The position numbers and the translations under genes were made by a program. DNA of 64,000 nucleotides. Source: Dimorphilus gyrociliatus. Lineage: Eukaryota > Animalia > Annelida. Location: positions 850,156 to 914,155 of the forward strand of contig CAJFCJ010000013.1 of the NCBI GenBank assembly GCA_904063045.1, read 5' to 3'. Position 1 is the first letter of the stretch, and each line of letters starts with the position of its first letter. Below, piece by piece: positions 1,706-59,598 of the stretch. The notes below the pieces were generated by a model, which was not told where the DNA came from, ran no database searches, and worked only from the letters and a program-made list of their open reading frames with translations.

Positions 1706-2896
1706 CTAATCAAAATAGCCGCCAGATCCAATAGCTACAGATTCCTCTGATCCAATTGGCATATAGTCGAGAATCCACATTAAGTCGGTAAGAACAACTA
1801 TAAGAAATTGGAAAAAAATTTGCTAAGAATACAACTTTAACGTATTTGAAAAGGATAACAAACGTAATTCTTTCGGCTTTAATGTTGTATAAATTGGTGA
1901 ACAAGTTGAATTACATGGTTCGCGTGGTGTTAATCGAAATTTATTTTCACCCTTTAGTTGCGCAATCCAAACCATAGGCAAATTTATATCGGCTGGCTTA
2001 AACTTGGCGGTTGTGTAGCGGGAGGAGATTAGAAGCCAATTTGTTTCGCCCCCTTCGACCATGGATGGCATAAAGTATGGTCTTTGATAGAATGTTCGTA
2101 GTTTTTTTGCTGCTTGCTTATCGCAATTTTCCCTTTAAATAGAGAATGAGATTATTAATAATCTGTTTAATTGAAAAGCATTAATTATACATACCAATGA
2201 GCGTACCAATTTGTTATATGATTATTTGATGCCAATTCCAGGAGTTTTGGGAGATTACCCCTTTTCATCCGAACATTACTAGCATACATGCAAGGTGGAG
2301 CAGATTTTAATTCTTCTTCTTTTTCAAAAATTTGCCTTAAAAAGTTAATATTATAAAGAGATACTGCTGGCCAAGTGTTATCAACAGCATCGGTCACAAT
2401 AAGTGGTCTATCTTGCTTTAAGAAATTTTCAGCTACCAAAGCTGAACTAATATTGGACAATCTGGGAATTAGCTTGATATTTTCGCATAATTCGCAATCT
2501 TCATTCGTTAAGGTTCTAATTTCATGAAAAGGATTTGGAATAAGGCATTCATCCATGTAAAATGACGACCATCCGTTATACTGTACTGTCTGTAAAAGGG
2601 CATTTGAAGTTAATCAGCCAATTTAACGCTCGAATACTTACATAGATGAATATTGTCTTCGCTGCCCAATAATAGGATCGTTTGATGAATTCAATATGAC
2701 TTAGGGCGTAAATAATAAAGAATAATATGAGCAGAATTGAACAATATCTTTTCCAAGCTCTCCAGCTCCATTTTCTTTGTAGTTTCAGCAACGATCCAGC
2801 CTGTTTCTGGATATCTTGATCGGTTAATCCTTTCTCCCGGCTTTTCTTTAATAGTTCTTCTATTTTATTGCTTATTTCACGACGCTTCTCATCCAT
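1706..2896 (-). CDS. C6orf89/BRAP-like type II membrane protein with cupin/JmjC-like C-terminal half, 4 exons
   Basis: Approximate exons 2896-2642, 2589-2190, 2124-1863, 1790-1706, joined by GT-AG introns. One TM segment, then PLIVTDA..W, WY.HWENC..AAKKLRTFYQRPYFMP, WIAQLKGENKFRLTP..PC, as recalled for C6orf89 homologues. Confidence 0.75.
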
Positions 2897-4289
2897 CCGT
2901 CTTCACTCCTAGCCGTCGTCTGCTATTAGAGGTTTAACTTCCAAACAGAACTTCAGATGGCGCAACCAGTCATCAATGAGTTAATTTCCTTAAATTAACC
3001 ATAATTACGAACAATTGTCGTTTTGTTCTACCTCAATCGATAGAATAGTCATAAAGTTTGATGTTTAATGTCATATTGATTATTTATATTTTCATAGCTG
3101 ATACTCCTCTGTAAACATAATAATTTTCATAATAAAAAAAAAACAATCCACTTCGTCTGGTGCACGTAGGAAAGGAATTGAAGTAGAACATTTCGTATTC
3201 CACCTGGAGTCATCTCTTATCATATATTAACAGCCAAACACCAATTATTCATAAATTTCTCTCTGCTCTATTCTATTTTTCGCTGTTCAAATGTTTATTA
3301 GTCTGTAATTTTGAAATAGGAAGTCGACTCTCTTCCTTTAAAGCAAAAACTAGAACAATATCTATCTTAGAGCGATTTATTTCACTATTTCAATGAAAAT
3401 TCTTTCTTAAATTACCAGTAGGCCTACGTTTGTCAAGGGAATCTAACTAAAGGAAAGAATGGGAGTTCCTAAAGAAAAAACAAAAAATACTAAAGTAAAT
3501 TCTTTTTTATCTCCCCCTACCTTCTGCTGCGCTGTTTCTATGGAAAAGGTGGAAGAGTGCTTAGTAATAGGATAAGGTTTGAACTACATTTAACCTCCAA
3601 CTAAGTACTGTTGATTTATTTAAAATACGCTAGGCTGTTTTTCTTCAAATTGTATCCTTGTGCCCTAATTTCTACAAGCTAAATTAGAGGAATCGAATTC
3701 TAATTAAATCAGTAGACATCTCTATAAATAGTATAAAATTTGTCCTTATATTCTTTTCAATATTTAATTTTATTGTGTTGGCCTGTTTTCGCTTGACAAA
3801 CAAGCTTTTTTTATTAAAATGTATATTATGGTAGTGGTAATAAAAACAAGGCGAAGAAAGAATATACTAATTCTTTAAGTATAACGGCAAAAAATAATGG
3901 ATATAGTAATAAAATTACGTATAGCCTAATAGCATTTGTCATAGTAGTTGGAGTGTTTAAACTTACCCTAGGGGTCAAGAGGTTAACGGGTTTACTAAAT
4001 TTATTTCTTACTTTTGTGCAATTGTTCTCATTTACAAAAGGAATATATAAATATCCGCTTATGTCGTATATGGGATATATCAGTAATTCGTTGTTAGGCT
4101 ATAACTCCTACTTAAACATTGCTTGTCTGGTTTTAAGTTTCGGACAATGATGAATGAAGGATTTTGAGACGTGTTTATGTTTTTTTAGTACTATAATTAT
4201 TTACATTCTTTAGAACTAGTAATTTCGCACTGTAGGTGGTGGTTATTACTTATCACTTAGGTTTACATTTTCCAGCTGTTTTAATGTCA

Positions 4290-4680
4290 TACAGAACTTT
4301 ATACGAAATAAGGCGTATTCCTAGAACCATTATATTAATTTAGTCTAAAGAGGACGAGAGAAAATTATTCGTAATAAGGCCTGCTTCAGCTCTTTACATT
4401 TTTATAAGAGAAGGTCATCCAAAAGATAAATTACCTAAGATGATTAATAATCGCAGGTGTGTGAATATTTCAACAGTAAATCAACTGCAATGGGCGCCAC
4501 GAGTGGGATAAAAATATCGTCTAGGGAGACACTAAGGGACGAATAATTAATTATCTTAATTAAAATAAGAAAAATTCTATAGTTATATTTATATTCAGCG
4601 TTTAACTGCCTGAATAAAATCCTCCTTTACTCTCCAATGCTGTAATGTTCTAGACGTCTAAAGAAAGAAAACGTCAATAA
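4290..4680 (-). mobile_element. Possible second degenerate RT fragment, non-LTR-like
   Basis: Minus strand 4435-4300 reads VIYLLDDLLL*KCKELKQALL...TKLI, then VLGI after a frameshift. An SLDV motif lies upstream at ~4660. Stops throughout, so this may be chance. Confidence 0.25.
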
Positions 4681-4956
4681 TTCAGTCCTTCACCCTAGTG
4701 ACGCTCTCATGGCGGCCAAATATAGTATAAAAAAGTAATTGCTCTTTTTTTAATTTATGCCTAGTTGTAACCGACCAGATCTAATAAAGATTTTTTTAGC
4801 TGGATAAAAACGAATAATGTTTTATCATTATCATTATCCAATAAATAACAACTCAATTGATGAACAAATCATATACAGTATAAGCTAAGTTTTCAAAGAG
4901 TTTATTATAAAGGAAATATACTGAGTATATAACATAAGTATACTGTTAAGGTTTAT

Positions 4957-4964
<8 letters not shown>

Positions 4965-5002
<38 letters not shown>
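4965..5002. repeat. (AT)n microsatellite
   Basis: Pure AT dinucleotide run. Similar runs at ~38983-39018, 44642-44670 and 61553-61585; (CT)n runs at ~27372-27392 and 29150-29172. Confidence 0.95.
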
Positions 5003-5013
<11 letters not shown>

Positions 5014-8000
5014 GATGTTTAATATTTAAGTAAATTTTAAGCATGTTATATATAAATTATAAAACAGGCGTACTAACTCCGCGATTATCAAACCAATACG
5101 TAATTAACTAAGCACACGTTTTTTTCAAGCATAAGCGAATTACGTACGTTGCAAGAATAAGTACAAGCATGGCACAACACACGTTTTCGACATCGAAAAG
5201 AATGGGGAACCAAGGTTTTGGCTTTAGTTAACAACATTCAGCGTCTTCTTAACGTTATAGTGATGCTCTACTAATACAACTTTCCTTCTATCATACAAGT
5301 GACTTTTCTTACATAATATCATGTAACATTTTTTTCGTTTACATTTTATATTCATAAATAGATAAAAATAAATAGAGAATAAATATATACGTATACATGT
5401 GTGGGCTATACACACGGATATACATATGTATTTAGAAAAGCGTTGAGGATAAAATATAGGATATAGGAGACGAAGTATATCGATTGTGTACAGCTGTAAA
5501 CTTTAGTAAATTATCTATGAGTAAGCTTTTGAAGATGTTCTTTTTCTTATTTTTAAATAATGGTTGCTATTGAGTTTTTACAGCTGGTTTTTGCCATATA
5601 ACAATGAACGTAAAAATAGAAACTTAAAAGGAGTATTAACTATAATCTCATAACTTCTACGAACACTTAAATATAAAAAAGGACAGTAAAACAAAAATAC
5701 AAAGAGAACGTGGAAAGAAGCAGAAAAATATAATTTGATTATTAAAAGTGTAGGAATGTGAGTTCGCTATTGATTCTTTGGAAAGAAACCCTGTAGAAAA
5801 AAAAAGATATATACCAATTATATATTTATTTGAAAATAGATATTTTTTGACTGGTATAAAAAGCTGCAGCAATGGAATGCCATTAATCAGGCATCTGTCG
5901 CTTAAAAACATATGTTTAAAACGAGGTTAGCTACTGCATCACGTGCATTTTCTATAAATAAACAAATCGTAGCAATATTCAACTCAGATGTTGAAGAAAC
6001 TATAGAAAAACATATAAAGAAATACGAACTTAATCATTTCCAGAACTCTTTCCTTTTCTAACAGTATCATAAAATTCTTATCTCGTGAGGAGCGACAAAA
6101 TAGTCACCATTAAAAGTATATGAGCTGCAATTGATGCGCTTCCGCTGTTAACGTTTCCTGAAAATTTTAAAAAGTTTATAAAGAACAATCGAATTGAGAA
6201 TCATCGGACAATACAAATATAAAGAAGGTAATCATAATAGAAAAGGTTTTCTCAAATTATTTCTCAAAAAGTTAATAACCAAAATCAATAAGAAAAGTAC
6301 TATTGAGCCATTTACAATTCACATAAAAAAGCGGCTTCGGCATTTTGTAAATCATTTTATGGAAATTGACAAGAATTATATTGACAAAAAAAATAAGAAA
6401 ATATAATCATGCAAAATTATGCTCATCACTGTAGTTATAAGCTTTGTATCCATCACGTTTTTTTGCCGTTGCAAGAATCGTATTAATTACGACATCGCAA
6501 GAGCCAGATACCTTAAAAACAATCGGCTAGAGACACTCATTTTATAAAGTATACTTTCTGTGCTGCAATAATGTTTACTTGACATATTCCTGTATATATA
6601 TATATACTGTATATATATATACAGTATATGTATATTATATTAATATCAACGTAATAGAAAATATTACATTTCAAACTCTGTAAGATATAACTCGAAACTA
6701 CTATTGAATATAACTTTATATTTGAAAGGGTGTTTGATAAGAGCTCATACATCTTGTTGTTCTAATTGATTTCACGGCAATTATCAACGTATTAAATATT
6801 ACTCGCCTTGTTTTTCCTCTTTATCTATCTTTATCTAAAAAAAAACAGTATTTGACAGGTTTTTTTCCTATTATTAACTATATATCATTTCTATTCATAG
6901 TTTGTAACATATTTTATCGACTTGGATAATAAATCAGACACTTGAATTTATCTTATATTGAGTAAAAAATGTTTCTCTCTTTTATGTTATGATCACCTAT
7001 TATTAGATACAGAATTAATATTCTCTAAATGCAATTATTTAGAATAATTGGTAGTAGTCTGCTTACTTGATGCATATTTTGTATAATTTGTAAATTACTA
7101 CGAATATCCCAATCGATATTCCCTCGTAAAAATCACTTATTTTATTATTCGTTTTTTTTATGTGCATAACATGTTTTTTTTTGCTGCAGGGAATTAATCA
7201 TATGTATATTGTATATCACAAAACTGCTCCTTCTCTATTTGATCCTTTGGGTAATTAAGCTTTAACCATAAATGAAAATAAATAAGCTATTTTTACTCTG
7301 CCACAAAAATATCTAAAACAACAAATTTACAAGTGTAAGAAATAATATTTAATTATGTTAACTAGTGCACGGCATATGATATTTTTATTAAATTAAGTCT
7401 ATATTTCATCAAATATTAAATAAACTCGAGAAAGATTTATAAACGATATAAAAAAAGTAATATATTTCTTTTCGATTTTTGTCTTTCCTGATATATAAAT
7501 TAGTCTCTGATTCTATATATTTTAAACTTTAATTGAAAAATTTTAGTCATTAAAGTAAAATTATTTGTAGATCACACGCTAAGATCAATCTGTCATTGTA
7601 ATTTAGAAGAATGAAATAGTAAAATAAATAGGACATTGTGTAGAAAGGGAATCGCTTTAAATCTACAGTTGGTATTTTTCTGGTACCTCCTTTATCAGAA
7701 AATTTATTCGAATTACACCATTGAAATGTATAAATATAGGTCAGGTCAGGATATATATATATATAATAATAATAATAGGACTATATCTTCTGACCATAGA
7801 TATATAAATACGCTAGAGAAAAAAGTGAAATATTTTCTCTCAGTATTTTATTTAGAACATCTGGCGAGACATCGCAATCATTCAAGTTTAATATATTAAT
7901 AAATATTACAACAAATCATCTAGTTGTGCACTTGACAAAAATTTACTTTATACATCTAAAAGCATTGAAATGTTACGTTGTCTTTGTGAAACAGAAAATC

Positions 8001-8108
8001 AGATTGTTATCTATAATATTATTAGACTTTTATCCTAGATTTTACAGTTTAATTGACTAGATTTCTTCCTGTCTTAGCAAGTTGTTATATTAAGTTTGTC
8101 TCCTTGTC

Positions 8109-9890
8109 TCAGAGGAGGAAGAAAAAGCTAATTAATAAAGCCGTAAGACCGCAAAACATACGACTATGAAGCGTCAGATCGTTTGCCTTACCACTATGGT
8201 TGTAGTTGCCCTTATCGGTCGATTTTTCTGTTGTATCTTCTGCAAAAATTTGTATTGGCACTAAAATGTAAGCCCGGTTGCTATCGACTCATTCACTCGA
8301 TGATATATTGGTGAAAATGACCTCGTCATTACTCCACACAATGATTTTAATGTTAATTTTACTTAATTTTTCGCAAAGTAGAAGCATCACAATAAAGTAA
8401 AATAAATTACTGATGCATGCATTCAAAATGGTTAGTAAAGTAGGTAAAGTAATATTTGAAATGAAAAACAGAAGCCTAGTAGAAAAAAAAATACCTATAC
8501 CGACATAAATGTATGATATAAAAAGTATAAACATGAGAGACTTACCTGCCCATGAAATAGAAATTTCTTTTTCATTCGAACCATGCTCATTTTCTGCCTT
8601 CAATTTTAAATCCAAGCTTTCCAAAAAGCTTACATCAAATTCATTTGTAGATAAGACCAGTTCAAGCTTGTATTCATCATCGATCTTAGATGATTCAACG
8701 GTTATTGTGGTATTGTCTACAATCACCGTTTTATTTAAGGGATGCAATTCGAATTCTTCATTAACAGACCATTTCCAATCTTCCGTAAGAGGATTCATGT
8801 AAATACTACAAGAAATATTAAACGGTCCAGATGAGGATTTCTTGATGTGAGTATAATCTTGACATTCAAATTCCGGCTTGCTAACAATTTTCAACGTGCG
8901 ATGAATGATATCAGATTCGCTTTCAAACTTCTTGGCTGCTGCCTTCAGTCTAATACTTCCCTGGTTATCCGTCAACTTAAAATCACTAAATTTTGCCGTG
9001 TATGTGTAATAACAAATGGTATGTTGATAAATCACATCTATTTTACTCTTATCGCATTCGACATCAGGACCATCCCATTTCACAGGGCTCTCTTTTTCAT
9101 GTTCTCCACCATCAAATGTTATGATTGGTTTTTCTTCTGTTTTCAAAGATACTTTGTATTGAAGCCTTTTAGTTTTATCCGATTTTAATACAATAATTGG
9201 GTCTTCACTCTCCTTCTCCAGTTCTTTTTCCACAGTTTCGTTTATGTTTTGAGTAATTTCTTTTAATTCAGTCGATTCTATCGGTAAGTATGGTATTACT
9301 AGTTTAGTCTTTATATAGGTGTTTGGAGATATTCCGCCCGTTGACGGTCTACAAGCAAATTCACCCATATCATTGGGTCCTATGTCAGTCATTGTAAAAC
9401 GAAGATATCTTCCATAACCTTTCTCTGCGTATGATTTGTAATTCACAGGATAAAAGTATCTGTTCTTCGTAAATTCTGTTGGTGGAGATTCGGCGGAGTT
9501 GAGATGACCTCCGAGAAACTTATACTCAGAATCTCCGTTATCCTTTTCGAATTTTTTGAATAAACTAATTTTCATTTGCTTTTTTGGCTCATCAACGCTG
9601 CATACCAGCGTAATATTGCCACCCTTCTTCAACTGTTGCAATTCTTCTTTACTCTTACTGGCGTACAACCCCACACTAGGATAAACTGGAAAAGTTCCAA
9701 AAAAAAAAAAAAATCAATATGGAAGATGGCGCGCAATATTTTGTTACTTACATTTGCCAACTGGACTGTTGACTGTATAATCGATTCTCCCTATTAGATG
9801 TAATTTGAAATCCTCATCTTCACGCGTGTCTGATGACTGAACAGATATAACAAATAAGCATATCCATAGTAAAGTGATAAGAGCCCTCAT
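8109..9890 (-). CDS. Secreted Ig-superfamily cell-surface protein (about 3 Ig-like domains), probably GPI-anchored, ~476 aa
   Basis: Exons 9890-9752 (signal peptide MRALITLLWICLFVISVQS), 9685-8546 (Ig motifs ITLVC...DMGEFAC; FNISC...LKAENEHGS) and 8260-8109 (NHSGKANDLTLHSRMFCGLTALLISFFFLL*, GPI-like tail). Both introns are phase 1 and the total length is divisible by 3. Confidence 0.75.
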
Positions 9891-46230: not shown

Positions 46231-49200
46231 ATGAGAGATACTGAAAATTTATGGGATGGAGAGTCAAGAATGTATGGTATTGAAAATCCTGCATTTAATA
46301 CGTCGTTACGCCTTGCTAAATCAGAAGTAAATTAATCTTTTTTCAAAGTACATTTATACACTTTTAAAAACTGTAATTAATTATTTCAGAGTACCAATAG
46401 CACTGCTAGTTTAGCCTCTTCATCAAGTGAGCAGGAACAATTAGTTTTCAAGTACGTACAGCGGAGTGAGGATTCTGTGAAAAAAGGAGATTGGCAAAAT
46501 GCCGTTCGTCATTATTCTAGAGCAATATCTCTCGATCCGCGGAATCATATTTTATATAGTAACCGTTCAGCAGCATATCTACATTTAGGTAACGGGAAAG
46601 CTGCTTTAGAAGACGCTTTAACTGCTCGTAACCTTCAACCTTGTTGGGCTAAAGCCCATGCTAGAGAAGCAGCTGCTTTAGAAAAATTAGGAAGAACTTT
46701 AGATGCTGTTGCAGCTCATGCAGATGCCGTTTCCTTGGATCCATCTTCAAATAACCTTCTGGATTCTTTAATTTGCTATATTCAAAACTGCGAGTTGGTG
46801 AAAAAGTTTATTGATTTAGATTTTCGTCAATTAGACGAAATCGGATTATCTCAAAGCGCCAGTGTTGTATTGGCTTTGATTGGTCAACGATTGGTATCAT
46901 GCAAACAATACCCATATGCTATAAGGATCCTAGAGGCTGCTTTACGTGTCAAGACTTCGTCTCTCAGGTTACGATCGTCAATATTTTCAACTTTGGCTAG
47001 AGCTCATTACAGTGTCGGAGAGTTGGAAAAGGCTATTGTTTGTATGCAGCAAGATTGCGCTGCATCCGCTGCATTGCATCATATTGATGGTCAATTTAGG
47101 GCCTATTCAAACTTAGGGGTGGCATTTTACAAAAAGGGACAATATTCAGACGCCATAGATGCTTACAAAAACGTTCTTTCGCTGGCAACTCGTGTGAAAC
47201 AACATCGAATGGCTTTGCACGCTTTATCCAATTTGGGATATTTGTATACGGCCAAAATGGAATTTGCTGATGCGATAGCGGCTCATAGACAAGCCATATT
47301 AGTTGCTAGAACAATTAAAGATAGGCACCAAGAGGCGAAGGAAATGGGGAATGTCGGAACCGTTTTCCTTGTAATTGGTGATTGCAGGGCCGCTTTGGCT
47401 TGCCATTCGCATCACCTTTTGGCTGCAAGAAACTTAAAAGATAAATTTGAAGAAGCACGAGCATATTCTAATATGGGAGCCGCTCGTCACCGTCAAAAAC
47501 GCTATGAAGATGCACTTTCACTTTATACTGATGCACTAAATATTGCTCAAGACCTAGAAAATATACCACTCCAATTAAAAGCGTATGACGGCCTGGGTTT
47601 GGCCGCCCGTTGTTCGGCACAATTAGCAGCAGCCCAAAAATATCACGAGAAACAACTGGATTTAGCCCTTAACAGCCGACAAAAATCAGCTGAGGCAAGA
47701 GCCTGTTCGAACTTAGGCATTCTGTTCTCTTTACTAAATGAGCATGAGGCTGCTCTTAAATTGCACTCATCTCATGCTAGAATAGCGCTAAAGTTGGGAG
47801 ATAAAGGGTCTGAATGTCAAGCTATGTTCAACATGGCAAATTGCCTCTATAATCTAGGTCAACTTGAAAAGGCTACGAGTCTGTACGAAAAAGTTTTAAC
47901 AACATCTCGCAAACTTCACGATAAACATATTGAAAGCAATTGCCATTGTCACATTGCCCAAAGCTACGAAAGTTTACGAATGTATCAACGAGCCGCCGAA
48001 CACTTTGAACTGTCAATTAAACTGTGTTGTGAATTGAAAGATTGCGTTGGTGAAGCCAAATCGGCTAATCTTCTTGCCCGATTACATTCCTCAACCGGTC
48101 ATCTAACTGCCTGCCCTCCACTCTATGAACGCTGTGTTGCCCTCTGGCAACAGGCCAATGAACCCATAGCTGAGGCGAATGCCTGGAAAACATTGGCCGA
48201 ATGCCATACAGCAATGTGTGATTTTGAAAAGGCCTCGGAATATTTAGGTAAAGCTTTGTCTCTTGCTAGAGCTTCCAGTGACATATCAACAGTTTGTGGT
48301 GTGTATTGTTCATTATCGGCTTTAAAACGGAATGAAGGTAAACTGGATGAGAGTCTGGAATATGCTGAAAAAGCTTTCGAGATCGCAAAATCCAGTGTCA
48401 ATCTTCGTTGTTTGTATATTGTTCAAAAGGCTTTGGGTGAGAGTTTCTCCGCTAGAGAGGACTATGATTCAGCAGTGAGAATTTTTCATCAGCTTGTTAA
48501 CACAACTAAATCTGTTGGTGATAAAAAATTAGAGTGCGAAGCTTTGTCTCTTTTGGGTGCTAACTATAAAAACATGATACAAATTGATAAATCATTGAAT
48601 ATTCATAAGGAAGAATTGAGATTAGCTCAGGAATTGAATGATTTAAAATTTATATGTACAGCCAATTCCAGATTAGGAGATGTCCTTTTAACATTAGATG
48701 AATTTCCTAAAGCTTTGACTTATTTTGAAGAGCAGGCTGAAAAAGCAAGAATTATAGGCGATTTCCATTCGGAAGCTACAGCCTACGGAAATATGGCCAT
48801 CTGCAGAATGAATATGGGTCAAATAACCGAAACAATTAACCTTTTGGAAGATCAGATAAATACCTTAGACAAATTACCGTGTGCTCATATGATACCGACC
48901 ATTTTATTGGAGAATGCTCAGGCGTATTTGAAATTAGGCGATTGCTACGAGAATTTGGATGATTTCGACGAAGCCATTAAATCTTATGAAAAAAATCTAG
49001 CTTTGGCTATAAATGCAAAGTCTGCTCTTCACCAAAGTAATGCCTATAGAAAGCTTGGAAACGCTCATAGAGCAGTTGGAAACTTACACCAAGCTTTAGT
49101 GTGCTTTGAGAAACGTTTGGTGTTAGCTCACGAGTATGACGATGTGCGAACAAAAGGGACGGCTTGTGGTGAATTGGGCTGCCTTCATTCACTTCTCGGT

Positions 49201-52200
49201 AATTTAGATCAAGCAGTTTCATATTTGGAACAACAGCTAAGAATCGCTAAAAGTGAAAACGATTTAAATTTAGAAGCTGATGCAGCTTGCGGTTTAGGTG
49301 GTGTTTTCCAGCAAATGGGAGTTTACGAAAAGGCGTTGGAGTATCATGAACTTGACTTATCTCTGGCTAAAATTATCGAGAATTCGGCTGCTCAATGCCG
49401 CGCATTTGGTAATCTAGGATTAGCCAACGAATCTCTTGGTCAGCTAGAAAAGGCTTTTGAGCATCAGCAAAAGCATTTGAACTGTGCTAGTGCAATGAAT
49501 GATGGTGTTGCTCAAACTCTCGCCTTATCCAGTCTTGGTAGAATTCAATACGCTTTAGGAAAACACGATTCTGCTATTGATTATTTAAGAAAAGGTTTAG
49601 ATATTGCTCAGGAATTGGGAAGGACAGCTGATCAGGCCAAAATTCATCATCGTCTCGGCCTTGCTCTGTTCGCCAGAGGTACTCTTACCGATGCCCTACA
49701 CCACTTAAGTACTGCTACCGAATTACTAGACGATATCAGAAGAGATTCCCAATTAGCAAATGAATATCGATTATCATTGTTCGATTTACAAACAGCGGCA
49801 CTTCATGCTCAATTACGAGTTCTGGTTGCTCTAAATAGAATTGACGATGCTCTCGTATTGGCTGAGCAAGCTAGGACCAGAGCTCTTATTGAATTAATGT
49901 TAGAGAGGCAAGGAAATATTTCGGACATGGTTCCAATTATCGATGTAGATATAGTTAGAAATGCCGTTGTCGAACACGGAAGGCATATTGTTTATATGGC
50001 ATTAGCTGCGGGATTCTTACACGTGTGGCTGCTTTCACCAAAGAACGGCAGCGTATTGAATTTTTTTCAAATTGACTTAAATGAATTAGAAAGTACCGAC
50101 AATGACGAAAGTCAAAGTATGAGGAGTGCAGGAGCCGCCTCTCTTTTGGATCAATATATTAGCCAAGCAAGGAATTCGCTTGGGGTCGATTCTCATATAC
50201 CGCTATTTTCCTCAGCAAGATCATCTATGAGATTAGGAGGAAGAGATATCGGTAGCGATGATGATGACGATGACGATAAGCCATCAGACTTTCTCCGATT
50301 ATTGCGACGCAGTCATATATCTAACAAGAGCGTATACAGTCGTATATCAACAAGCTCCAAAAGATCATTTACCAGTCTTTTGTCCATCAATTCCAATAAT
50401 TCTTGCCCCTTCGTTTCTCTCTATAATTTATTCTTTTCAAAACTTGACGATTCTCTGAAAAAGGCCGAAGAAGAATGTCATTTAACACTCGTTTTACAGG
50501 CCGATTTATACTTAGTTCCATGGCCCCTGTTGAGACCTGGTCCAGAATCTCCATATTTATTTGAAAGATTTTCTCTTTTGATCGCACCGTCATTACGGGC
50601 TCTTACAAGAAATACTGGTTTAGCTCCATCTTGCGGCGGTTTAGTGATAGGTCCACCTTCACCCGTACCACCTCCGTGGTATATGATGACAAGAGAAGCT
50701 GATGATGAAGCTAGAATGGTATCAGATATAATGGGATGGAGATGTATGTCTGCGGGCAATGCGACAAAACAGGCAGTAATAAAAGCTATAACTGGAGCCG
50801 AAGTTTTACATTTTGTTGTCCATGTCTCTTGGCGTTTATCGGCCATTATTTTGGCTGTTGACTCTCGCATGCAGCTAAACGAGGATTCCATTTTACCATC
50901 TTCAATTTTAACAGCCAGCGATTTATTAGATATTAAATTGAGGGCTAAATTAGTAGTTCTATCAACAGCTTACTCGCAAGATAGAGGTTCCACAATAAGT
51001 GCCGATGGACTCTTGGCTGTTACTAGAGCGTTTTTGGCGGCAGGAGCTAGTACAGTTTTGGTGTCTCTATGGCCGGTACCTGGTATTGCTAGTAGGGGAA
51101 TGATGAAAGCACTATACGGTGAATTAATTCAAGGAATTCCAATAACTCAGGCTCTTTCTCAATCGCAAAAAATACTAAAACATTCCCCTGGTACAAGTCA
51201 CGCTTCGAATTGGGCGGGATGGATTATTGTTGGCGTAGACAACCCCACACTATCGTCACATACGGCTTTACTTGCCGATGCACTTGCATGTATGCTTAAA
51301 TCTGCTGTTTCAACTAACACTCCAAAAAGGGAGGCAATGAGAGTAGTTCTTCATTTGGTGGAAAAATCTTTACAAAGAATGAATCATGGTGAAAAACGCG
51401 CAATGTATACGCCAGTAAGTACACTTCAACAAAGAATTGGTCAAGAAGGAGGTGGATGGAAAGAACTTTTATCTTCTGTTGGATTCAGACTTGAAATGCA
51501 ACAGCAAGCTGTTTATTTTTTTCCGTCAGTTGATCCCGGACAGCGATTGGCTAGATGTTCAGCTGCTCTTCAGGCCTTATTGGCTCTCCCGGCTCTCACT
51601 TTAGTCGCTTTGTCAAAGCTACTCGATAATCCAGTGGCCGCTCGGGAATTGCACCAGCTGCTTCGAAGTATTGATCGTCCCTCTTCGTCAACCCTCTCGT
51701 TAAAATTGCACGTCCATATATGGAGAGCAGAGGGATGTCATGAATTACTTGCTTCTTTAGGGTTTGATCTAATTGATGTGAAAGGAGAAGAAGTGTCTGT
51801 TAGAGCAAGTAGACAAGCCACCAGAAGGATGCTTCAATTAACAGTTCATGCATTAGCTGCTCTTTTTGACACTGCTCCAAGCCATCTATCATTAGACTCT
51901 TCAAGTAGCATAGATTCCCCTCCTTCATCTCCCTCCTCTCCTTTATCAGCTTTACGACGTCCAAAAGTATCGAATATACCCGATTCAACAGATAGTGAAC
52001 AAGAAGAAATGCACTCAAAAGTTAATTCAGGCAGGCTGCCATCATTTGTTACCTCATCCCCGAATCATAAGCCAAATAGCGGTCCGTTTATGCCATTAAA
52101 TACCAGCGGGACGTCCGGATTCCAGCCGATTAACGCACACATAAAAACAGATGAAGAAGACGAATCGAATCTCTTTTCCTATCCTAAATATTTAGACTTT

Positions 52201-52305
52201 CACTCGAAACTTCGACCATCAGTTGACAATTATACAGACACAAATTTCAACGTCGAAAGTGAACTGAAAAATAACGAATCTTACGATGGAGCAACTTTTT
52301 GCTGA
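46231..52305 (+). CDS. TTC28: Tetratricopeptide repeat protein 28 (TPR array plus degenerate CHAT domain), ~2003 aa
   Basis: Exons 46231-46326 and 46390-52305. Long RAYSNLG-type TPR array; CHAT region (LYLVPWPLL, ERFSL.IAPSL, EVLHF, AFLAAGA..VLVSLWPV, WAGW); C-terminal LHLVEKSLQR and GGWKELL..VGFRLE. Confidence 0.95.
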
Positions 52306-52543: not shown

Positions 52544-52999
52544 ATGGATCTCAACAAAGACGATCAACCGGGTGTTTCAAAAGAATCTAGCCCGAATTCC
52601 GAACCGAATAGCTCTTTAAATGGTAAATCGGAAACTAAGAAGATCGTTGCATCTAAAAAGACTGATAAATTACCCCCGCTACTCAAATCCAGATTAAAAA
52701 ATACGGTGGAGGAGGTTGCTAACCTATTATCGCCCATTAACATTGTCGACGATAATCGAATAACAATCAGGAATTTATCACATCGTGTGAATCAAGATCA
52801 TTTAAACGAAATTTTTGGAAAGTATGGGCCAATCGCAAATATTGACTTAAAGGAAGAATTTGCTGTGATAGAATACGAGACATTTGAAAATTCTCAAGAA
52901 GCAATAAAAAAGATGGATCAGGGATTTATCGACAGTAAACAGATTCTAGTTGAACCGTATTCCAGCGAAAAACAAGAAGAAATTGTTTTAAATCTATAG
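52544..52999 (+). CDS. Single-RRM protein, RNPS1-like RRM without RS domain, intronless
   Basis: ITIRNLSHRVNQDHLNEIFGKYG, FAVIEYE, AIKKMDQGFIDSKQILVE resemble the RNPS1 RRM pattern; real ATG in A-rich context. Confidence 0.7.
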   Translation: MDLNKDDQPGVSKESSPNSEPNSSLNGKSETKKIVASKKTDKLPPLLKSRLKNTVEEVANLLSPINIVDDNRITIRNLSHRVNQDHLNEIFGKYGPIANIDLKEEFAVIEYETFENSQEAIKKMDQGFIDSKQILVEPYSSEKQEEIVLNL

Positions 53000-53177
53000 A
53001 ACGTTGCGATACTCATAATTCGACTTTAAACTAGTGAACATGTATTAAAAGTTTCTTGGCATAGTTAAAAATGTACAATTGTCAAAAAGACTAGTTTAAT
53101 AGCAAGTTGTTGTGTTTTAAAATAATATTAATCTAAAAATAGTGGATTTGCTAAAAAAATAAACTCTTGCAAGCTAG

Positions 53178-56100
53178 CTACTGTCCGATAAGAAAGGCTT
53201 CTTTTTTGACTGGGTAAAGCGCAGTTTCTGTTTTCACGAACCAACATTTTACGTTTCCTCGATAAGTCAAAAGGGCTTCAAAGGGTCTATTATTCATAAC
53301 AACGACACCTACCCTTTGGCCACTTTGTACAGGTTCGTGAACATTTTGATAATTTCTTTTTACGTGTCCTAGAATTCCTCCTACGTGTTTGGTTAACCTT
53401 CGGTCAGGGATTCCGACATCTAAATGCTTTACTCCAAAGGCATGACTGCCTAGTTTAATTTCAACTTCTAAATCATCAGGATATTCGCCAGTTTGTATTG
53501 TTATTGCTTTTGTAGCTTGATCATATACCATTAGGATATCGCCAATTGTCAAGGCTCCTTCTTCTCCGTTAAATAACATAGACGTCTGTCTTACTCCATT
53601 AGTATCAACAACCACAGAGTTGCTAGGACTTTTCACGATCACTTTATGGAAGTAAAAGTCATCTAATAAAGTAGCCGAAACAGACCATCCTGCAGCAGTA
53701 TCATTCAGTAAAATGTAACTGTCTCCAGATTGTCCAAATAGATCAAAGCAAAGGGGCTTCAATGCAGTTGTATCTGGCCAAACAATAATATGAGGATCAT
53801 CTGTAATTTCTGATGATGTACACTTGCAGGGCATGCAGGTCATGTCATTAGTTGGATTATAATCGTTATACGATATTACATTTTCCGAGCCATCAAATTC
53901 AGATACAGCTTTAACGGAAACACATATCATCAAGTCTTTCCTTTTACAATCTTCTTGAGTCAGAGTCACCGTATAACGGGTTATAGAAACCCCTCTTGTT
54001 GTGCCGGCAAATAAGGTGGCTCCTTCCAGAGTTGCTTCATCAGCTTTTGGTTTACTGTTTGATTCAAGTGGGAAAACATATAATCGGTAGAAGAAGTTCT
54101 TCGAAGGAGGATTTTTTGGATATCCGATATCCTGATCACCAATATTCGCAATATCGGCAACAACCTCGACAATACTACCATCAGGTACAATTTCATAAGT
54201 TGTTTTTCCAGTCTCCTTTACTCTTAAATTGCTTATCATTACGTCCACTTTAGAAGTTTCGCATTCTATATCCATACACGCTAAATCATTAGCAGTATTT
54301 GGATCAATATAAGCAATAAAAGTTTCCGAATTTTTCAATACTCTAGCGGCTTTAGTGCAAACGCATATTTTATCACCACAATACGACTTGGAAAATTTAA
54401 TTGTTCGCTTAAGGCTAGCAGTTCTAGTTTGACCAACGTTCAAGGTAATATCGGATTCACTAGATGATACTTTGGGCCAAGCATTTCCAATACTTCCATC
54501 CAATCCTAACAATCCAACATGAAAAGCGAAATTGTCGGAAAGAGGCGATTGCGGATACGGTATGTTATCTCTTCCAAGATTCTTCAAATTTACTATTAAA
54601 TTCAAAGTAACGGAATCACCATTATTTGCATTGATGAAATATTTTGTTTCTTTAGAGTGCATTCTCAATGCAGATGTTTCAACATCAGCATAAACATCCT
54701 TAGAATCATCATATTTACATTCGATATCAATACAAGCCAAATCATTTTTCGTATTCGGATCAATATAAGAGACAAATGTCTCTGAATTTTGTAGTTGTCT
54801 CGCCGGTTTGGTACATAAACAAATTGTGTCTCCGCAAAACGACTTAGAGAATTTTACTTTTCGCAATAATGCAACTGTCCTCGTTTGATCCACGTCCAAC
54901 TGCATATCAGAGTCTGGTGAATCAACTCTGGGCCATGAATTTCCAATAGTACCGTCAAAGCCCAAAATTCCAAGACGAAAGACAAAATTTTCAGTTAGAG
55001 GAGATGTAGGGAAATCAATATCGTCTGGACCCAAATTTCTTAAGTTTGCTCTTAAGTTAAAGTTAATAAATTGTCCATTTTCAGGATTAACAATTTCAAA
55101 GCGTTGATTTCCAGATTCCATTCTCAAATTCGAAGTTTCTACATCCGACTGAACGTCAATAATTGGATCAAGCTCACAGGAAATATCCATACATGCCAAA
55201 TCATTCTCTGTGTTCGGATCAACGTACGCAGCTCGATTTTTACCATCAATAAACAGTTTGGTCGATTTAGTACAAAGGCAGATTTTATCACCGCAAAATG
55301 ATTTCGAAAATTTTACTTTTCTAGTCATCGTCACAGTTCTTGATTCACCGCGATCCAAGCTTATATCAGTATCGGATGAAGAAACTTTTGGCCACGAGTT
55401 ACCAACTGTTCCATCGAGTCCAAAAATTCCAACTCTAAATACAAAGTTGTCAGAGAATGGCGAAGTTGGAGAGTCAATGTCATCAGGTCCCAAATTTCTG
55501 AGTCTGGCTCTTAATTCGATAGTAATTGTATCTCCATTTTCGGCAGACATTCCATAAACAATTTCATTATTCATTGTTCTCAATTGCGATGTTTCAACAT
55601 CAGCATTTGTCAAAGGATTTGGTTGTGGACAAACGATATTCATGCAAGCCAGATCGTTGGCAGTATTCGGATCGATATAAGCGATATGAGTTTTACTGTT
55701 TTTCAAGATTCGGGCAGCTTTGTTGCAGAAACAAATTTTATCGCCGCATAGGCTCTTTGAAAATTTGATCTTTCGCGACATTCTTATAACTCTGCGTTGT
55801 CCGTCATTCAATGATATATCTGTATCAGAAGAAGACACCTTTGGCCAACTATTACCAATTGAGCCATCGGCGCCAAGAATTCCGACTCTGAAAACAAAGT
55901 TATCATTCAATGGAGACTGTGGAGAGTTGATGTCGTCTGGTCCAAGATTATCAAGTTCAGATCTAAATTCAAGAGTGAGCGTTTCGCCGTTGTTGGCTGT
56001 AATCTCGTAGTCATTTCGATTGCTACCAGTTCGTAAGTAATTTACTCTAACATCAGCCATTGGGGTTGAGTCACTATCGCATTCGATTAACATACAAGCC

Positions 56101-59080
56101 AAATCGTTTCCTGTGTTTGGATCTACGTAGGCAACTTCATTCTTTCCATTAGAGAAGACTTTCTTAGGTTTGACGCACAAACAAATTCTATCTCCGCACA
56201 TTGATTTAGAGAATTTTATTTTCCTTGTCATGTATACGGTTCGCGATTGGCCGTGATTGAGACTGATGTCGGTATCAGCAGAACTGGCCTTGGGCCAAGT
56301 GTTTCCAATTTGTCCGTCGAAACCCAAAATTCCAACAAGGAAAACAAAGTTTTCCGAAAAAGGACTTTGAGGAGAGTCAATATCACTGTCTCCAAGATTT
56401 CGTAATCTTGCCTTAAGGTTAAGAGTAACGCTATCACCGTTATCAGCATCAATTTTGTAGACATTGTCATCATTTTTAGTTCGAAGATTAGAAACTTCAA
56501 CGTCGGAAACCCCAACAAGATTTTCACCATCACAAACAAGCTTCATACAGGCCAAGTTATTTGCAGTATTGGGATCTATATAAGCTACATAACTTTTTGA
56601 ATTTTTAAACATTCTCGTTGCTTTTACGCAAAGACATATTTGATCGCCGCAAAGTGATTTAGAAAATTTAATTTTTCTAGTCATCTTGACTTCTCTCATT
56701 TGTTGATTATTAAGCGTTATGTCTTTCTCAGACGAAGACGCTTCAGGCCAAACATTGGCTGATGTTCCATCAAGACCAAGTAGACCAACACGAAAAGAAA
56801 AATTTTCAGTCAACGGAGATTTGGGATATCCAATATCTTTATCGCCGAGATTCTTAAGTCTGGCTTTCAATTCAAGTGTAACTGTTTCACCATTATTGGC
56901 GTTAACTTGATATTCAAAATCACTACTGAAAGTTCTCAGGTCGACAGCTTCAACATCTGACAAACCATTATCGCAGACAATATTCATACAAACTGCATCG
57001 TTGCTCGTATTTGGATCGTTATATGCAATGTAGGTTTTACCATTTCTAAATACTCTTGAACTCTTGACACAGAGACAGATTTTGTCGCCACATAACGATT
57101 TCGAGAATTTAATTTTTCTTGACATGTAGAAAGTTTTGTGTTGACCTTCGTTCAGACTGGCTTTGGTGTTTGACGACACTTTGGGCCAGTTGCCTGCCGA
57201 TGATCCGTCTAAACCTACTATACCAACTTGCAAGACGAAATTATCGGTCAGAGGAGACTGTGGTGAACCAATATCGCCTTGCCCCAAATTTTTCAATCTT
57301 GCTTTCAAATCAAGTGAAACTATTTCGCCATTATTGGCATTTATCACATATTCATTATCATCGTTGAATCTCTGCAAGTTAGATGCCATTACATCAGTAA
57401 GCCCGTCGGTTTTCGAGCACTTAATTTTCATGCAGGCCAAATTGTTACTGGTGTCTGGATCCGTATATGCAATATAAGTCATTCCATTAACAAATTTTCT
57501 CATGGCTTTAACGCACAAACAGATTGTATCACCACATAACGACTTGGAGAAAGTAATATCACGTTTGAAGGAAACTGTCTTGGATTGGCCATTGTTTAGA
57601 GATATATCGGTATCTGAAGAGAGTGCTTCAGGCCAAACATTTCCAATAGTACCATCAAGGCCAAGTATTCCAACGCGAAATACAAAATTTTCCGATAATG
57701 GATTTGTCGGAGAAGATACATCACCATCTCCCAGATTTGTGAGTGTTGCTTTCCAGTTAAGGGTAACTTTATCACCATTATCGGCGCTTATTTCGTATTC
57801 ATTTTCATTATCTACAGTTCTTAAGTTTGAAGCTTTAACATCTGAATCAGTTTGAATATTATCAGCTTCGCATACGATATCCATACAATCCAAATCATTG
57901 TTTGTATTGAGATCAGTATAAGCCAAATGTGTTTTTCCACTCGAAAAGTGACGTTCAGCTTTGACGCAAGCACAAACTTTTGAGTTACATAACGATTTCT
58001 TAAATGTAATATGACGATAAAGAGAAATAGTCTTTGTTTGTTTGTTATATAAGGTTGTACTACTATCACCGGAAGATGCCTTGGGCCATGTATTTCCGAT
58101 TGATCCATCTAATTTCAAAAGTCCAAGTCTAATATCGAAATTATGGTTTAGTGGAGCTTTTGGAGAATCAATATTTTCTGTTCCATGATTTTTAAGGTTG
58201 ACTTTAAATTCCAATTTAATATTTTGACCTTCATCAGCATTTATATTATATTTAACACCATCAGTCTTTGTCCTCAGATTTGACACTTGTACATCAGATA
58301 CACCTGAGGGTGATAAAATACTAGTTAAGAGATATTTCTTATAATAATAAGATAAGTTTTACCTGTAGCAGGAGCAGAATTGCAAGTTACTTTAATACAA
58401 GCTAAATCATTCTCCGTGTTTTGATCCTTGTAAGCGATATAAGTTTTATCTTTAAAAACTCTTGTAGCTTTCACGCATAGACAGAGAAAATCATCGCAAA
58501 GAGATTTTTTGTACATGACTCGTCTTTTAAGCTCAATAGTCTTAGATTCTCCATTTTTTAGTGTTATATCGCTGTCGGACGACGCCGCTTCCGGCCATGT
58601 ATTACCAACTGAACCGTCCACCTTTAGAAACTGTTAATGGTAACATACAGATTAATAATATTAAATATAAACTTTTAACCAATAGATAACTTACTCCGGC
58701 AAGAAGTTCAAAATTATCAGTAAGCGGCAAAGATGGTGTCAATATATCGTCATTTCCTAAATTCTTTAAATCTGCCTTAAGTTCAAATGTCAGGTATTCA
58801 CCTTCGTTCGCATTTACGTTGTAAGTATTCTTTTCATCAGACGTTCTCAAGTTCGAAACCTTCACGTCTGCTATTGTATCTTTTAAGGGGAAAAAATAAA
58901 AAGATACATTATTAATAAACAATTCGAATAAAGTCAAAAAAAAGAGAAAGAGAGAGAATAGAATGGAAATATTCATGCAGAATAAGAACGTATTAGAAAC
59001 AAAAAGTATATATATTTACCAGCTAACAATCCCGATAAGAAGCTTAAAATTAAAGCCAAAAACAGCCCTCGCAGTGCCAT
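53178..59080 (-). CDS. Secreted 1879-aa protein: signal peptide, 11 tandem ~150-aa Cys-containing repeats, DPH site and ITIH-C-like terminal domain
   Basis: Exons 59080-59020 (MALRGLFLALILSFLSGLLA), 58879-58695, 58630-58363, 58303-53178 sum to 5640 nt in frame. Repeat consensus sDVexsNLRT..y.i.A.NG..v...A.L.NLG..DI..P..P...NF.F.vG..g.DG..gn.WP.....L..G....R.i.FsKs.CgdxiCxC........Y.DPnt.NdlaCm.i.C. Confidence 0.9.
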
Positions 59081-59598
59081 TTTTTTGCTTGATTTAAAAC
59101 TTTATTTGAAGAAAATTCTTCTCTTAATTTAACATTTACTTGAAATATCGAGCATTTAGTAAATAACTAACAAAATCCTGGGTATTTATACAAAGTTGAG
59201 TGTTCTTAACAGTTTGTCGAGTTTGATAGTTTTTATGTTGAAGTTGTACTAGCTTAATTAAATACTTTAGGTCTTTCAAAATGGCTTCTAAAAGTTAAGT
59301 TATAAGTAATATCATTTGTTTCAAATTGATAGTGTACGCGTTCAAGTGAGTAGTGTCACTGAAAGTTACTCAAATTTTTTAGCATCTAAACAGCTCGAAC
59401 AATCATCGGCTTAGAAATAGAACGAAAATTTTCTAAAAATAGTTTGATTAGAAAAAAAGTAACGCATTTGAAATTATCTAGACGCCTACGTAATCGTAAA
59501 TATGAATAAGACGAACACCAGACAGTTTGAACTGTAAAATACTCTAGTTTGACGCATTAATTAATTATACGTTCTTATGAGTGTCGCATCGCCTTTGC

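What the first reader, a model, noticed from the sequence alone, without database searches (positions are those of the whole stretch)
53178..59080. Undescribed architecture: secreted protein with 11 tandem ~150-aa repeats capped by an ITIH-like domain
Seen in sequence: a signal peptide, 11 well-conserved repeats (the last divergent), no TM segment, and a ~215-aa C-terminal domain. Inference: the beta-strand pattern, the L.NLG motif and the terminal D.n..N(N/D) motif resemble CARDB/DUF11-like Ig folds, giving a long rod. In ITIH proteins this C-terminal domain follows VIT-vWA domains, so here it appears attached to a different cargo. Candidate structural protein of cuticle, mucus, adhesive or egg cocoon.
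Basis: partly seen in the sequence, partly recalled or inferred. Interest (0 to 1): 0.88.

Follow-up and report, generated by a model that had tools for sequence, protein, structure and literature searches.

The report
Secreted Ig-repeat rod with ITIH-type cap
A transcribed gene of the tiny marine worm Dimorphilus gyrociliatus encodes a 1879-residue secreted protein made of eleven Ig-like repeats, and it ends in a domain shaped like the self-cleaving tail of vertebrate inter-alpha-inhibitor heavy chains, so the rod may be cut and perhaps covalently anchored to matrix sugars.

Summary
On the minus strand, four GT-AG exons (59080-59020, 58879-58695, 58630-58363, 58303-53178) encode a 1879-aa protein. 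It has a signal peptide, 11 tandem repeats of about 150 aa (the last divergent), no membrane segment, and a 206-aa C-terminal domain that begins at Asp-Pro-His.

The gene is DgyrCDS9483 of the annelid Dimorphilus gyrociliatus, an unnamed database entry. Contigs from two sequencing runs skip exactly the three introns, so it is transcribed.

No Pfam model matches either module. A confident AlphaFold model of the C-terminal domain matches the ITIH1-6 C-terminal regions as the top 25 Swiss-Prot hits (TM up to 0.73). Among solved structures it matches only vWD and RGM domains (Z 8-12, then 3.4). The Pro of DPH aligns with the first residue of the post-cleavage RGMB fragment and a FCGBP D10 chain. 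The repeat is an Ig-like sandwich; CARDB is the best match, but only marginally.

The domain defines a family that Pfam misses: 73 clusters, and all 15 named members (13 among those 73) are from D. gyrociliatus, with varied cargo. Other first-stage notes on this genome mention DPH-linked proteins elsewhere, but not this gene.

Self-cleavage at Asp1674-Pro1675, and possible ester anchoring, are inferred and not shown. I rate this a new variant of a known kind, of moderate interest.

The parts
53094..59139 (-). Approximate transcript span: 59-nt 5' UTR, CDS with 3 introns, 84-nt 3' UTR
   Evidence: The intron-free contig L001 (5783 nt) carries the CDS at 60-5699. Laid on the window, it starts at 53120 at record position 27.
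59020..59080 (-). Exon 1: start codon and signal peptide (aa 1-20 plus the first base of codon 21)
   Evidence: Sequence and GT donor. Hydropathy maximum 2.1. The N-terminus is conserved in orthologues P0002 and P0003.
58880..59019 (-). Intron 1 (140 nt, GT..AG)
   Evidence: Skipped by contigs of runs X1 and X2.
58695..58879 (-). Exon 2: first part of repeat 1
   Evidence: Repeat HMM positions 1-59.
58631..58694 (-). Intron 2 (64 nt), inside repeat 1
   Evidence: Skipped by contigs of X1 and X2. The same position is split in orthologue L002 and paralogue L003.
58363..58630 (-). Exon 3: remainder of repeat 1
   Evidence: Repeat HMM positions 59-148.
58304..58362 (-). Intron 3 (59 nt)
   Evidence: Skipped by contigs of X1 and X2.
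53178..58303 (-). Exon 4: repeats 2-11, C-terminal domain and stop codon (53178-53180)
57849..58295 (-). Repeat 2
   Evidence: Repeat HMM, E 3e-64.
57405..57842 (-). Repeat 3
   Evidence: Repeat HMM, E 1e-68.
56967..57395 (-). Repeat 4
   Evidence: Repeat HMM, E 1e-63.
56511..56957 (-). Repeat 5
   Evidence: Repeat HMM, E 1e-69.
56064..56504 (-). Repeat 6, the unit that was modelled
   Evidence: Repeat HMM, E 5e-71. AlphaFold model with pLDDT 91.7: an all-beta sandwich.
55614..56054 (-). Repeat 7
   Evidence: Repeat HMM, E 3e-69.
55158..55601 (-). Repeat 8
   Evidence: Repeat HMM, E 5e-68.
54696..55145 (-). Repeat 9
   Evidence: Repeat HMM, E 9e-66.
54249..54686 (-). Repeat 10
   Evidence: Repeat HMM, E 2e-69.
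53802..54245 (-). Repeat 11, divergent (about 32% identity to the others; altered Cys pattern)
   Evidence: Repeat HMM, E 3e-42. Identities; alignment.
53790..53798 (-). Asp1674-Pro1675-His1676, the predicted self-cleavage site
   Evidence: In the 56-sequence family alignment, D is kept in 54, P in 55 and H in 55. Model residue 16 (Pro) aligns with the first listed residue of the RGMB fragment (169) and of FCGBP D10 chain B (4081).
53181..53798 (-). C-terminal ITI_HC_C-like (vWD-superfold) domain, about 206 aa
   Evidence: AlphaFold model with pLDDT 88.6 and pTM 0.83. Fold matches. It is the most conserved part of the protein: 82-92% identity against 59-84% for the repeats.

Best explanation
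SHOWN. This is a real, spliced and transcribed gene of Dimorphilus gyrociliatus (DgyrCDS9483). It encodes a secreted, acidic protein of about 205 kDa. The protein has a signal peptide and eleven tandem ~150-residue all-beta Ig-like domains whose nearest solved fold is CARDB. The eleven units are one-to-one orthologous in three related species. The protein ends in a ~206-residue domain of the vWD / RGM / ITIH-C superfold, closest to the C-terminal domain of vertebrate inter-alpha-inhibitor heavy chains. That domain starts at a nearly invariant Asp-Pro-His motif.

INFERRED. The mechanism follows ITIH1-3 and the GDPH-containing vWD domains. In the secretory pathway the folded C-terminal domain promotes self-cleavage of the Asp1674-Pro1675 bond. 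This leaves a reactive Asp anhydride on the new C-terminus of the 182-kDa repeat rod. The 22.7-kDa cap then behaves as a removable propeptide: its two conserved cysteines both lie after the cut, and the family has no conserved upstream cysteine. The anhydride is resolved either by water (simple maturation) or by a sugar hydroxyl. In the second case the rod would be ester-linked to a glycosaminoglycan or another glycan of an extracellular matrix such as mucus, cuticle, adhesive or egg capsule. The rod would serve as the structural or binding element.
For: Gene model, splicing and transcription.

Identity.

No membrane segment, pI and mass.

Repeats. Repeat model pLDDT 91.7. CARDB is the top solved match at Z 8.1; a DUF11-named protein is the top AFDB cluster at TM 0.63.

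C-terminal model: pLDDT 88.6.
- ITIH1-6 C-terminal regions are ranks 1-25 in Swiss-Prot, with the alignment starting at query residues 14-15 in most of them.
- The Atlas shape search puts ITIH H3 first, and language-model features put ITI_HC_C first.
- In the PDB, only vWD domains (MUC5AC, MUC5B, VWF, FCGBP, MUC2), the RGMB fragment and two other entries (a katydid green pigment protein and Cypridina luciferase) score Z 8.2-11.9. Scores then drop to 3.4.
- The model's Pro16 aligns with residue 169 of RGMB and with residue 4081, the first listed residue of FCGBP D10 chain B.

DPH conservation: 54-55 of 56 sequences in a family with about 25% pairwise identity.

The cap is the best conserved region of the protein.

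Chemistry: GDPH self-cleavage gives an Asp anhydride. In ITIH3 this is esterified to GalNAc C6 of chondroitin sulfate (PMC8267560, read). Chondroitin sulfate is reported in lophotrochozoans (abstract of PMC5050403).
Against: No experiment or mass-spectrometry data show cleavage.

The residue before Asp is Asp or Asn in this orthologue group, not the Gly of GDPH. Gly is found in 36 of 56 family members.

Pfam PF06668 does not match the protein.

Bikunin, the vertebrate acceptor, is not known outside vertebrates (my knowledge).

In FCGBP the anhydride is simply hydrolysed and no cross-link forms (PMC8267560), so cleavage does not imply anchoring.

Three cysteines lie within 12 residues upstream of the site. 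They could tether the fragments, and I had no model coordinates to check this.

The tissue of expression is unknown.
Confidence: 0.55

Rival explanations
1. Cleavage without transfer. The Asp-Pro bond is cut, but the anhydride is hydrolysed by water. The two fragments either stay together (non-covalently or through a disulfide), as in FCGBP, MUC2 and RGM, or simply separate. The cut would serve folding or maturation, not anchoring.
For: FCGBP shows exactly this outcome (PMC8267560). The fold matches the RGMB fragment and a FCGBP D10 chain in register from model residue 16. Three cysteines lie just upstream of the site.
Against: The closest fold is the ITIH cap, which is released and which mediates transfer. 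The family has no conserved upstream cysteine, and its two invariant cysteines both lie downstream of the cut.
Confidence: 0.25
2. No cleavage. The C-terminal domain is a stable vWD-like binding or multimerisation module, and DPH is conserved for structural or calcium-binding reasons.
For: Many vWD domains are not cleaved. The Gly of GDPH is replaced in this orthologue group. Near-invariant acidic residues (D33, D60, D61) could form a metal site.
Against: D, P and H are each kept in 54-55 of 56 sequences across a family that is otherwise about 25% identical. The motif is in structural register with the first listed residues of the RGMB fragment and FCGBP D10 chain B.
Confidence: 0.15
3. The rod is not a matrix building block. 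It is instead a soluble recognition or defence molecule (for example for microbe binding or agglutination) built from Ig-like domains, and the cap acts only as a secretion or folding aid.
For: Ig-like and CARDB-like domains often bind ligands (fold matches). The domain family is expanded with varied cargo, all named members coming from D. gyrociliatus, a pattern common among defence genes.
Against: The eleven units are strictly one-to-one orthologous and fixed in number across species, with no sign of diversifying turnover. Word depth in run X2 is high, which would be more typical of a structural product, though depth is a poor measure of expression.
Confidence: 0.1

Closest known systems
C-terminal domain of inter-alpha-trypsin inhibitor heavy chains ITIH1-6 (Pfam PF06668, ITI_HC_C)
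   Same: Same fold (TM 0.55-0.73 by query; ranks 1-25 in Swiss-Prot models). Same position at the extreme C-terminus of a secreted protein. In most hits the structural alignment starts at the DPH motif. A conserved Cys-Trp lies near the end. Language-model features also rank this family first.
   Different: Sequence identity is only 14-19%, and the Pfam model does not match. The cargo is eleven Ig-like repeats instead of VIT plus vWA. Asp or Asn, not Gly, precedes DPH. No bikunin-type acceptor is known in annelids (my knowledge). Cleavage and transfer are untested.
GDPH-cleaving vWD domains (MUC2, MUC5AC, FCGBP) and the RGM C-terminal fragment
   Same: Same superfold (Z 8.2-11.9, 121-150 aligned residues), with a cliff to Z 3.4 below them. 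The Pro of DPH aligns with RGMB residue 169 and with residue 4081, the first listed residue of FCGBP D10 chain B.
   Different: Lower TM than to ITIH (0.36-0.43). No C8, TIL or other mucin D-assembly parts. No conserved disulfide that would bridge the cut. No Pfam VWD or RGM_C hit.
CARDB (PF07705) / DUF11 Ig-like domains, e.g. the CARDB domain of Pyrococcus furiosus PF1109 (3idu, 2kl6)
   Same: Best solved structural match (Z 8.1, 104 of 110 residues, rmsd 3.3). The top AFDB cluster is a 'DUF11 domain-containing protein' (TM 0.63, 22% identity). Atlas features give CARDB clusters. Both occur as tandem arrays in extracellular proteins.
   Different: None of 43 repeats hits Pfam CARDB at E<=1. 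The Z score stands only 0.4 above unrelated Ig-like folds. The unit is about 45 residues longer and carries five cysteines. CARDB is mainly prokaryotic.
Paralogous 'cargo-DPH-cap' proteins of D. gyrociliatus (DgyrCDS8601, 9726, 9723, 8708, 3694, 3693, 3691, 4491, 9214, 14801, 14668, 14734, 1982) and unnamed metagenome or transcriptome relatives
   Same: Same C-terminal domain with the same conserved motifs. The domain ends a median of 2 residues from the C-terminus. Two relatives, P0007 and P0008, also carry the repeat.
   Different: Most are 200-600 aa with short, unrelated cargo that Pfam does not recognise. Some hold two copies of the domain. Only this orthologue group carries an eleven-unit rod.

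Membership tests
ITI_HC_C (Pfam PF06668) | Match to the Pfam profile at or above its gathering score | tested here: not met
   No hit at E<=1 for the whole exon-4 protein or for the last 240 aa. One of 48 family members hits, at E 5e-4.
ITI_HC_C (Pfam PF06668) | Fold of the ITIH C-terminal region | tested here: met
   Ranks 1-25 in Swiss-Prot AlphaFold models are ITIH1-6 residues ~620-940 (1077-1313 in ITIH6), TM by query 0.55-0.73 and probability 1.0. The Atlas shape search gives TM 0.71-0.77.
ITI_HC_C (Pfam PF06668) | Asp-Pro-His at the N-terminal edge of the domain, at the processing site | tested here: met
   DPH lies at aa 1674-1676. Most structural alignments to ITIH begin at query residues 14-15. 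The motif is kept in 54-55 of 56 family members. That these ITIH residues are the processing site rests on my knowledge of UniProt annotation, not on a tool.
ITI_HC_C (Pfam PF06668) | Actual cleavage and ester transfer of the new C-terminal Asp to a glycosaminoglycan | not testable with these tools
   Needs protein chemistry.
ITIH heavy-chain family (VIT-vWA-ITI_HC_C) | N-terminal VIT domain and vWA domain | tested here: not met
   No VIT or VWA Pfam hit. The region is filled by 11 Ig-like repeats.
vWD domain (PF00094) / RGM_C (PF06534) superfold | Beta-sandwich fold shared by GDPH-cleaving domains | tested here: met
   Of the 33 PDB entries with Z>=8, 31 are vWD or RGMB; the next entry scores 3.4.
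vWD domain (PF00094) / RGM_C (PF06534) superfold | Sequence-profile match | tested here: not met
   No Pfam hit. The family profile finds nothing significant in PDB sequences.
CARDB (PF07705) / DUF11 (PF01345) | Sequence-profile match | tested here: not met
   0 of 43 repeats hit at E<=1. The repeat profile finds no PDB sequence at E<0.1.
CARDB (PF07705) / DUF11 (PF01345) | Fold closest to CARDB and clearly separated from other Ig-like folds | tested here: inconclusive
   CARDB of PF1109 is the top hit at Z 8.1, but archaellum FlaG and others follow at 7.7. Foldseek TM is 0.47 by query and 0.57-0.61 by target.

The most novel reading that the evidence does not exclude
Dimorphilus and its relatives use the ITIH-type Asp-Pro self-cleavage and ester-transfer chemistry as a general, modular covalent anchor. 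A family-wide C-terminal cap, found on at least 16 D. gyrociliatus proteins with unrelated cargo, would load each cargo onto matrix glycans. This eleven-domain rod would be the largest cargo. That would place protein-glycosaminoglycan-protein type cross-linking outside vertebrates and independent of bikunin, VIT and vWA.
Probability: 0.2. Interest if true: 0.8.

Novelty: new variant of a known kind. Interest (0 to 1): 0.5.

Why it matters
The only well-understood use of the ITIH cap is in vertebrates. There it attaches VIT-vWA heavy chains by an ester bond to chondroitin sulfate and then to hyaluronan.

This annelid gene shows the same cap on a completely different cargo, a rod of eleven Ig-like domains. 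The cap also sits on many other small secreted proteins of the same genome, none of which Pfam recognises.

If the cap cleaves and transfers here too, it would be an ancient, portable module for covalently fixing proteins to extracellular glycans. The worm family would then offer small, simple substrates for working out how the cap catalyses that reaction.

If it only cleaves, the finding still adds an unannotated branch to the GDPH self-processing superfamily, together with a new Ig-like repeat family.

Tried and rejected
- Pfam on the whole protein, the cap, the exon-3 segment, all 43 repeats and ten paralogues gave nothing significant.
- Sequence and profile searches of PDB chains with the cap and the repeat returned only chance hits: HIV protease, DegS, 14-3-3 and J chain, all at E>0.1. 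The faint precomputed 'Ig_J_chain' label on the orthologues is of this kind.
- Tandem Repeats Finder sees no DNA-level array.
- I tried to reach ITIH sequences with a family profile headed by a long paralogue (A6). This failed because the tool draws its seed words from the first 500 residues; it found only a neighbouring paralogue.
- A first version of that alignment, headed by P0009, was discarded. P0009 holds two copies of the domain and the alignment split between them.
- The domain-only profile search returned four D. gyrociliatus proteins only. The family's range outside the named genome therefore rests on unnamed contigs.
- No profile-profile test against PF06668 was possible, because no ITIH sequence could be fetched.
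- No paper mentions DgyrCDS9483, its UniProt entry or its GenBank entry. No relevant use of PF06668 outside vertebrate ITIH was found.
- The genome paper's differential-expression table lists 'DgyrG9483'. I could not show that this identifier is the same gene, so I did not use it.
- Mucin reading rejected: there is no Pro/Ser/Thr-rich stretch and only 3 N-glycosylation sequons.
- Membrane protein rejected: there is no second hydrophobic segment.


Full report
**Observation**

The window is AT-rich, about 32% G+C. It holds a 1702-aa open frame on the minus strand at 53178-58286. Reading upstream gives three short exons with canonical GT..AG borders.

The four exons are 59080-59020, 58879-58695, 58630-58363 and 58303-53178. 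Together they form a 5640-nt CDS of 1879 aa.

A word-index search of 5.8 billion proteins found an 1879-aa protein with 11 substitutions relative to the model. It was called on an intron-free 5783-nt contig of a coral metatranscriptome.

An exact look-up names a member of its 90%-identity cluster DgyrCDS9483 (CAD5120929.1, UniProt A0A7I8VYJ0) of the annelid Dimorphilus gyrociliatus.

I laid the contigs of two runs on the locus. Both skip exactly 58304-58362, 58631-58694 and 58880-59019. Word depth is 260 in the metatranscriptome and in the thousands to tens of thousands in the second run, whose library type is not on record. The gene is therefore transcribed and spliced as modelled. Depth suggests abundance, but the tool itself calls depth a poor measure of expression.

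**Anatomy**

- The N-terminus is the only strongly hydrophobic stretch. The Kyte-Doolittle score is 2.1 there and at most 1.06 elsewhere.
- The mature protein is about 205 kDa with pI 5.2 and 57 Cys. It has only 3 N-glycosylation sequons and no mucin-like region.
- A repeat HMM finds eleven units from 58868 to 53802.
- Repeats 1-10 are 40-65% identical to each other. Repeat 11 is about 32% identical to the others.
- Each repeat has five cysteines.
- No tandem array is visible at the DNA level.

Orthologues at 82%, 69% and 68% identity exist. One lies on a genomic contig with the same neighbours, an RRM gene and a TTC28-like TPR-CHAT gene. That contig has the same eleven units and the same intron inside repeat 1.

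Every repeat that could be compared is most similar to the same-numbered repeat in each relative (repeat 1 of P0004 was missing from the alignment). The eleven-unit array is therefore old and fixed in number, and is not being homogenised.

**The repeat**

An AlphaFold model built on 43 repeats is confident (pLDDT 91.7) and all-beta.

| Search | Result |
|---|---|
| Foldseek, PDB | CARDB domain of P. furiosus PF1109 among the best hits, TM 0.47 by query and 0.57-0.61 by target |
| VIA-align, PDB | CARDB first at Z 8.1, but unrelated Ig-like domains follow at 7.7 |
| AFDB clusters | Best hit is a 'DUF11 domain-containing protein', TM 0.63 |
| ESM Atlas features | CARDB clusters, scores 0.84-0.91 |
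| Pfam, 43 repeats | No CARDB or DUF11 hit at E<=1 |

I conclude that the repeat is an Ig-like sandwich with CARDB as the nearest known shape. Membership of the CARDB family is not shown.

**The cap**

An exhaustive HMMER search of 1.84 billion representative proteins with the last 220 aa found 73 clusters at E<=0.001. Most are proteins of 200-600 aa with the match at their very end.

All 15 members that carry a name are from D. gyrociliatus: 13 of the 20 clusters I looked up, plus two found by the profile search. Including this gene, that is at least 16 family members in this genome. The unnamed members come from run assemblies, one of them a coral-microbiome sample.

The trimmed 56-sequence alignment has about 25% pairwise identity. 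Even so, it keeps D in 54, P in 55 and H in 55 sequences, plus two cysteines and a handful of acidic and glycine positions.

Pfam recognises almost none of these proteins. One of 48 hits ITI_HC_C, at E 5e-4.

The AlphaFold model of the cap is confident, with pLDDT 88.6 and pTM 0.83.

- Against Swiss-Prot AlphaFold models, ranks 1-25 are the C-terminal regions of ITIH1-6 (TM by query 0.55-0.73, E down to 3e-10). Most alignments start at query residues 14-15, which are the DDPH. vWD domains follow at TM about 0.4.
- The Atlas shape search gives ITIH H3 at TM 0.71-0.77.
- Language-model features rank ITI_HC_C clusters first, then Root_cap, VWD and RGM_C.
- The ITIH cap itself did not appear among the solved structures searched. 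Foldseek finds only vWD domains there.
- VIA-align gives Z 8.2-11.9 for vWD domains of MUC5AC, MUC5B, VWF, FCGBP and MUC2, for the RGMB fragment, and for two other entries (a katydid pigment protein and Cypridina luciferase). Scores then drop to 3.4.
- In those alignments model residue 16, the Pro of DPH, pairs with RGMB residue 169 and with residue 4081, the first listed residue of FCGBP D10 chain B. That residue 169 begins the post-cleavage RGMB fragment rests on my knowledge of RGMB processing.

The motif is thus in structural register with sites where Asp-Pro self-cleavage has been observed.

**Mechanism**

GDPH sites in vWD-type domains are cut autocatalytically between Asp and Pro. The cut leaves an Asp anhydride that reacts with water, hydroxyls or amines. 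In ITIH3 the Asp becomes esterified to GalNAc C6 of chondroitin sulfate. In FCGBP it is merely hydrolysed, and the fragments stay disulfide-linked (PMC8267560).

By analogy, I propose cleavage at Asp1674-Pro1675. This would release a 22.7-kDa cap and leave a 182-kDa rod with a reactive C-terminus, which may be ester-linked to a matrix glycan.

In favour of this reading:
- The DPH motif is almost invariant across the family.
- The cap is the most conserved part of the protein, at 82-92% identity against 59-84% for the repeats.
- The closest fold is ITIH.
- The family has no conserved cysteine upstream of the cut.

Against it:
- There is no protein data.
- Asp or Asn, not Gly, precedes DPH in this orthologue group.
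- Three cysteines lie close upstream and could tether the fragments.
- There is no known annelid acceptor.

Chondroitin sulfate does occur in lophotrochozoans (abstract of PMC5050403).

I put cleavage at roughly 0.8 when summed over the two cleaving readings, and covalent anchoring at roughly 0.2-0.3.

**Relatives with the same architecture**

Two more distant cap relatives also carry the repeat.
- P0007 (44% identity in the cap) has at least two units.
- P0008 (40% identity in the cap) comes from the same sample as orthologue P0004. It has one unit, split by an intron at the same profile position as repeat 1 here.

The pairing of repeat and cap is therefore older than the eleven-unit gene.

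**Known or new**

The gene is already in public databases as an unnamed predicted protein. No paper in the searched library mentions it. I found no description of an ITIH-type cap on non-VIT/vWA cargo, but the library is incomplete.

Other first-stage notes on this genome describe the DPH site of this gene (s1-081062) and DPH-bounded constant and variable halves elsewhere in the genome (s1-081089, s1-083687). They agree with the family picture but are unverified.

I class the finding as a new variant of a known kind. The self-processing cap is a known type. The cargo is new, the Ig-like repeat family is new, and the cap has expanded within D. gyrociliatus, the only named source. Interest is moderate. 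The structural reading is solid, the chemistry is inferred, and the biological role is open.

Noticed in passing
window 46477-52305 (+): A single-exon 1942-aa open frame encodes a TTC28-like protein with many TPR units and a CHAT domain. The same gene lies beside the orthologue on contig L002, so synteny is conserved.
   Followed up: partly
window 52544-52999 (+): A 151-aa open frame with an RRM_1 domain (E 1e-12) sits between the TTC28-like gene and the 3' end of the repeat gene. It is also syntenic in L002.
   Followed up: partly
P0009 (DgyrCDS8601) aa 345-570 and 891-1119; P0079 (DgyrCDS3691); P0025 (DgyrCDS4491); P0021 (DgyrCDS8708): Some D. gyrociliatus paralogues hold two copies of the cap domain, one internal and one terminal. 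The internal copy of P0009 and the first copy of P0025 keep GDPH, which predicts cutting into three pieces. The internal copies of P0079 and P0021 have lost the motif.
   Followed up: partly
window 53802-58868 (-), each repeat: Every repeat carries an odd number of cysteines (five). Either one thiol per unit is free, or disulfides form between units or between molecules. Repeat 11 has a shifted pattern. I had no model coordinates to assign the pairs.
   Followed up: no
whole protein (window 53178-59080): There are only 3 N-x-S/T sequons in 1879 residues, although Asn is 8.4% and Ser plus Thr is 16% of the protein. This looks like depletion of N-glycosylation sites.
   Followed up: no
L003 9783-10912 (+): A relative's genome carries a small paralogue with one repeat plus the cap. 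Its intron is at the same position within the repeat as intron 2 of the window gene. Open frames of 74-270 aa upstream (3904-8813) match neither the repeat nor the cap profile.
   Followed up: partly
window 53120-59115, run X2: Many short contigs of run X2 end in Illumina adapter sequence, and their summed word depth is very uneven (3,000-70,000). This looks like a technical feature of that library, not biology.
   Followed up: no
Supplementary file 3 of PMC7854359: A gene labelled DgyrG9483 is listed as differentially expressed between developmental stages (log2 fold change +1.85). Whether this identifier corresponds to DgyrCDS9483 is not established.
   Followed up: no
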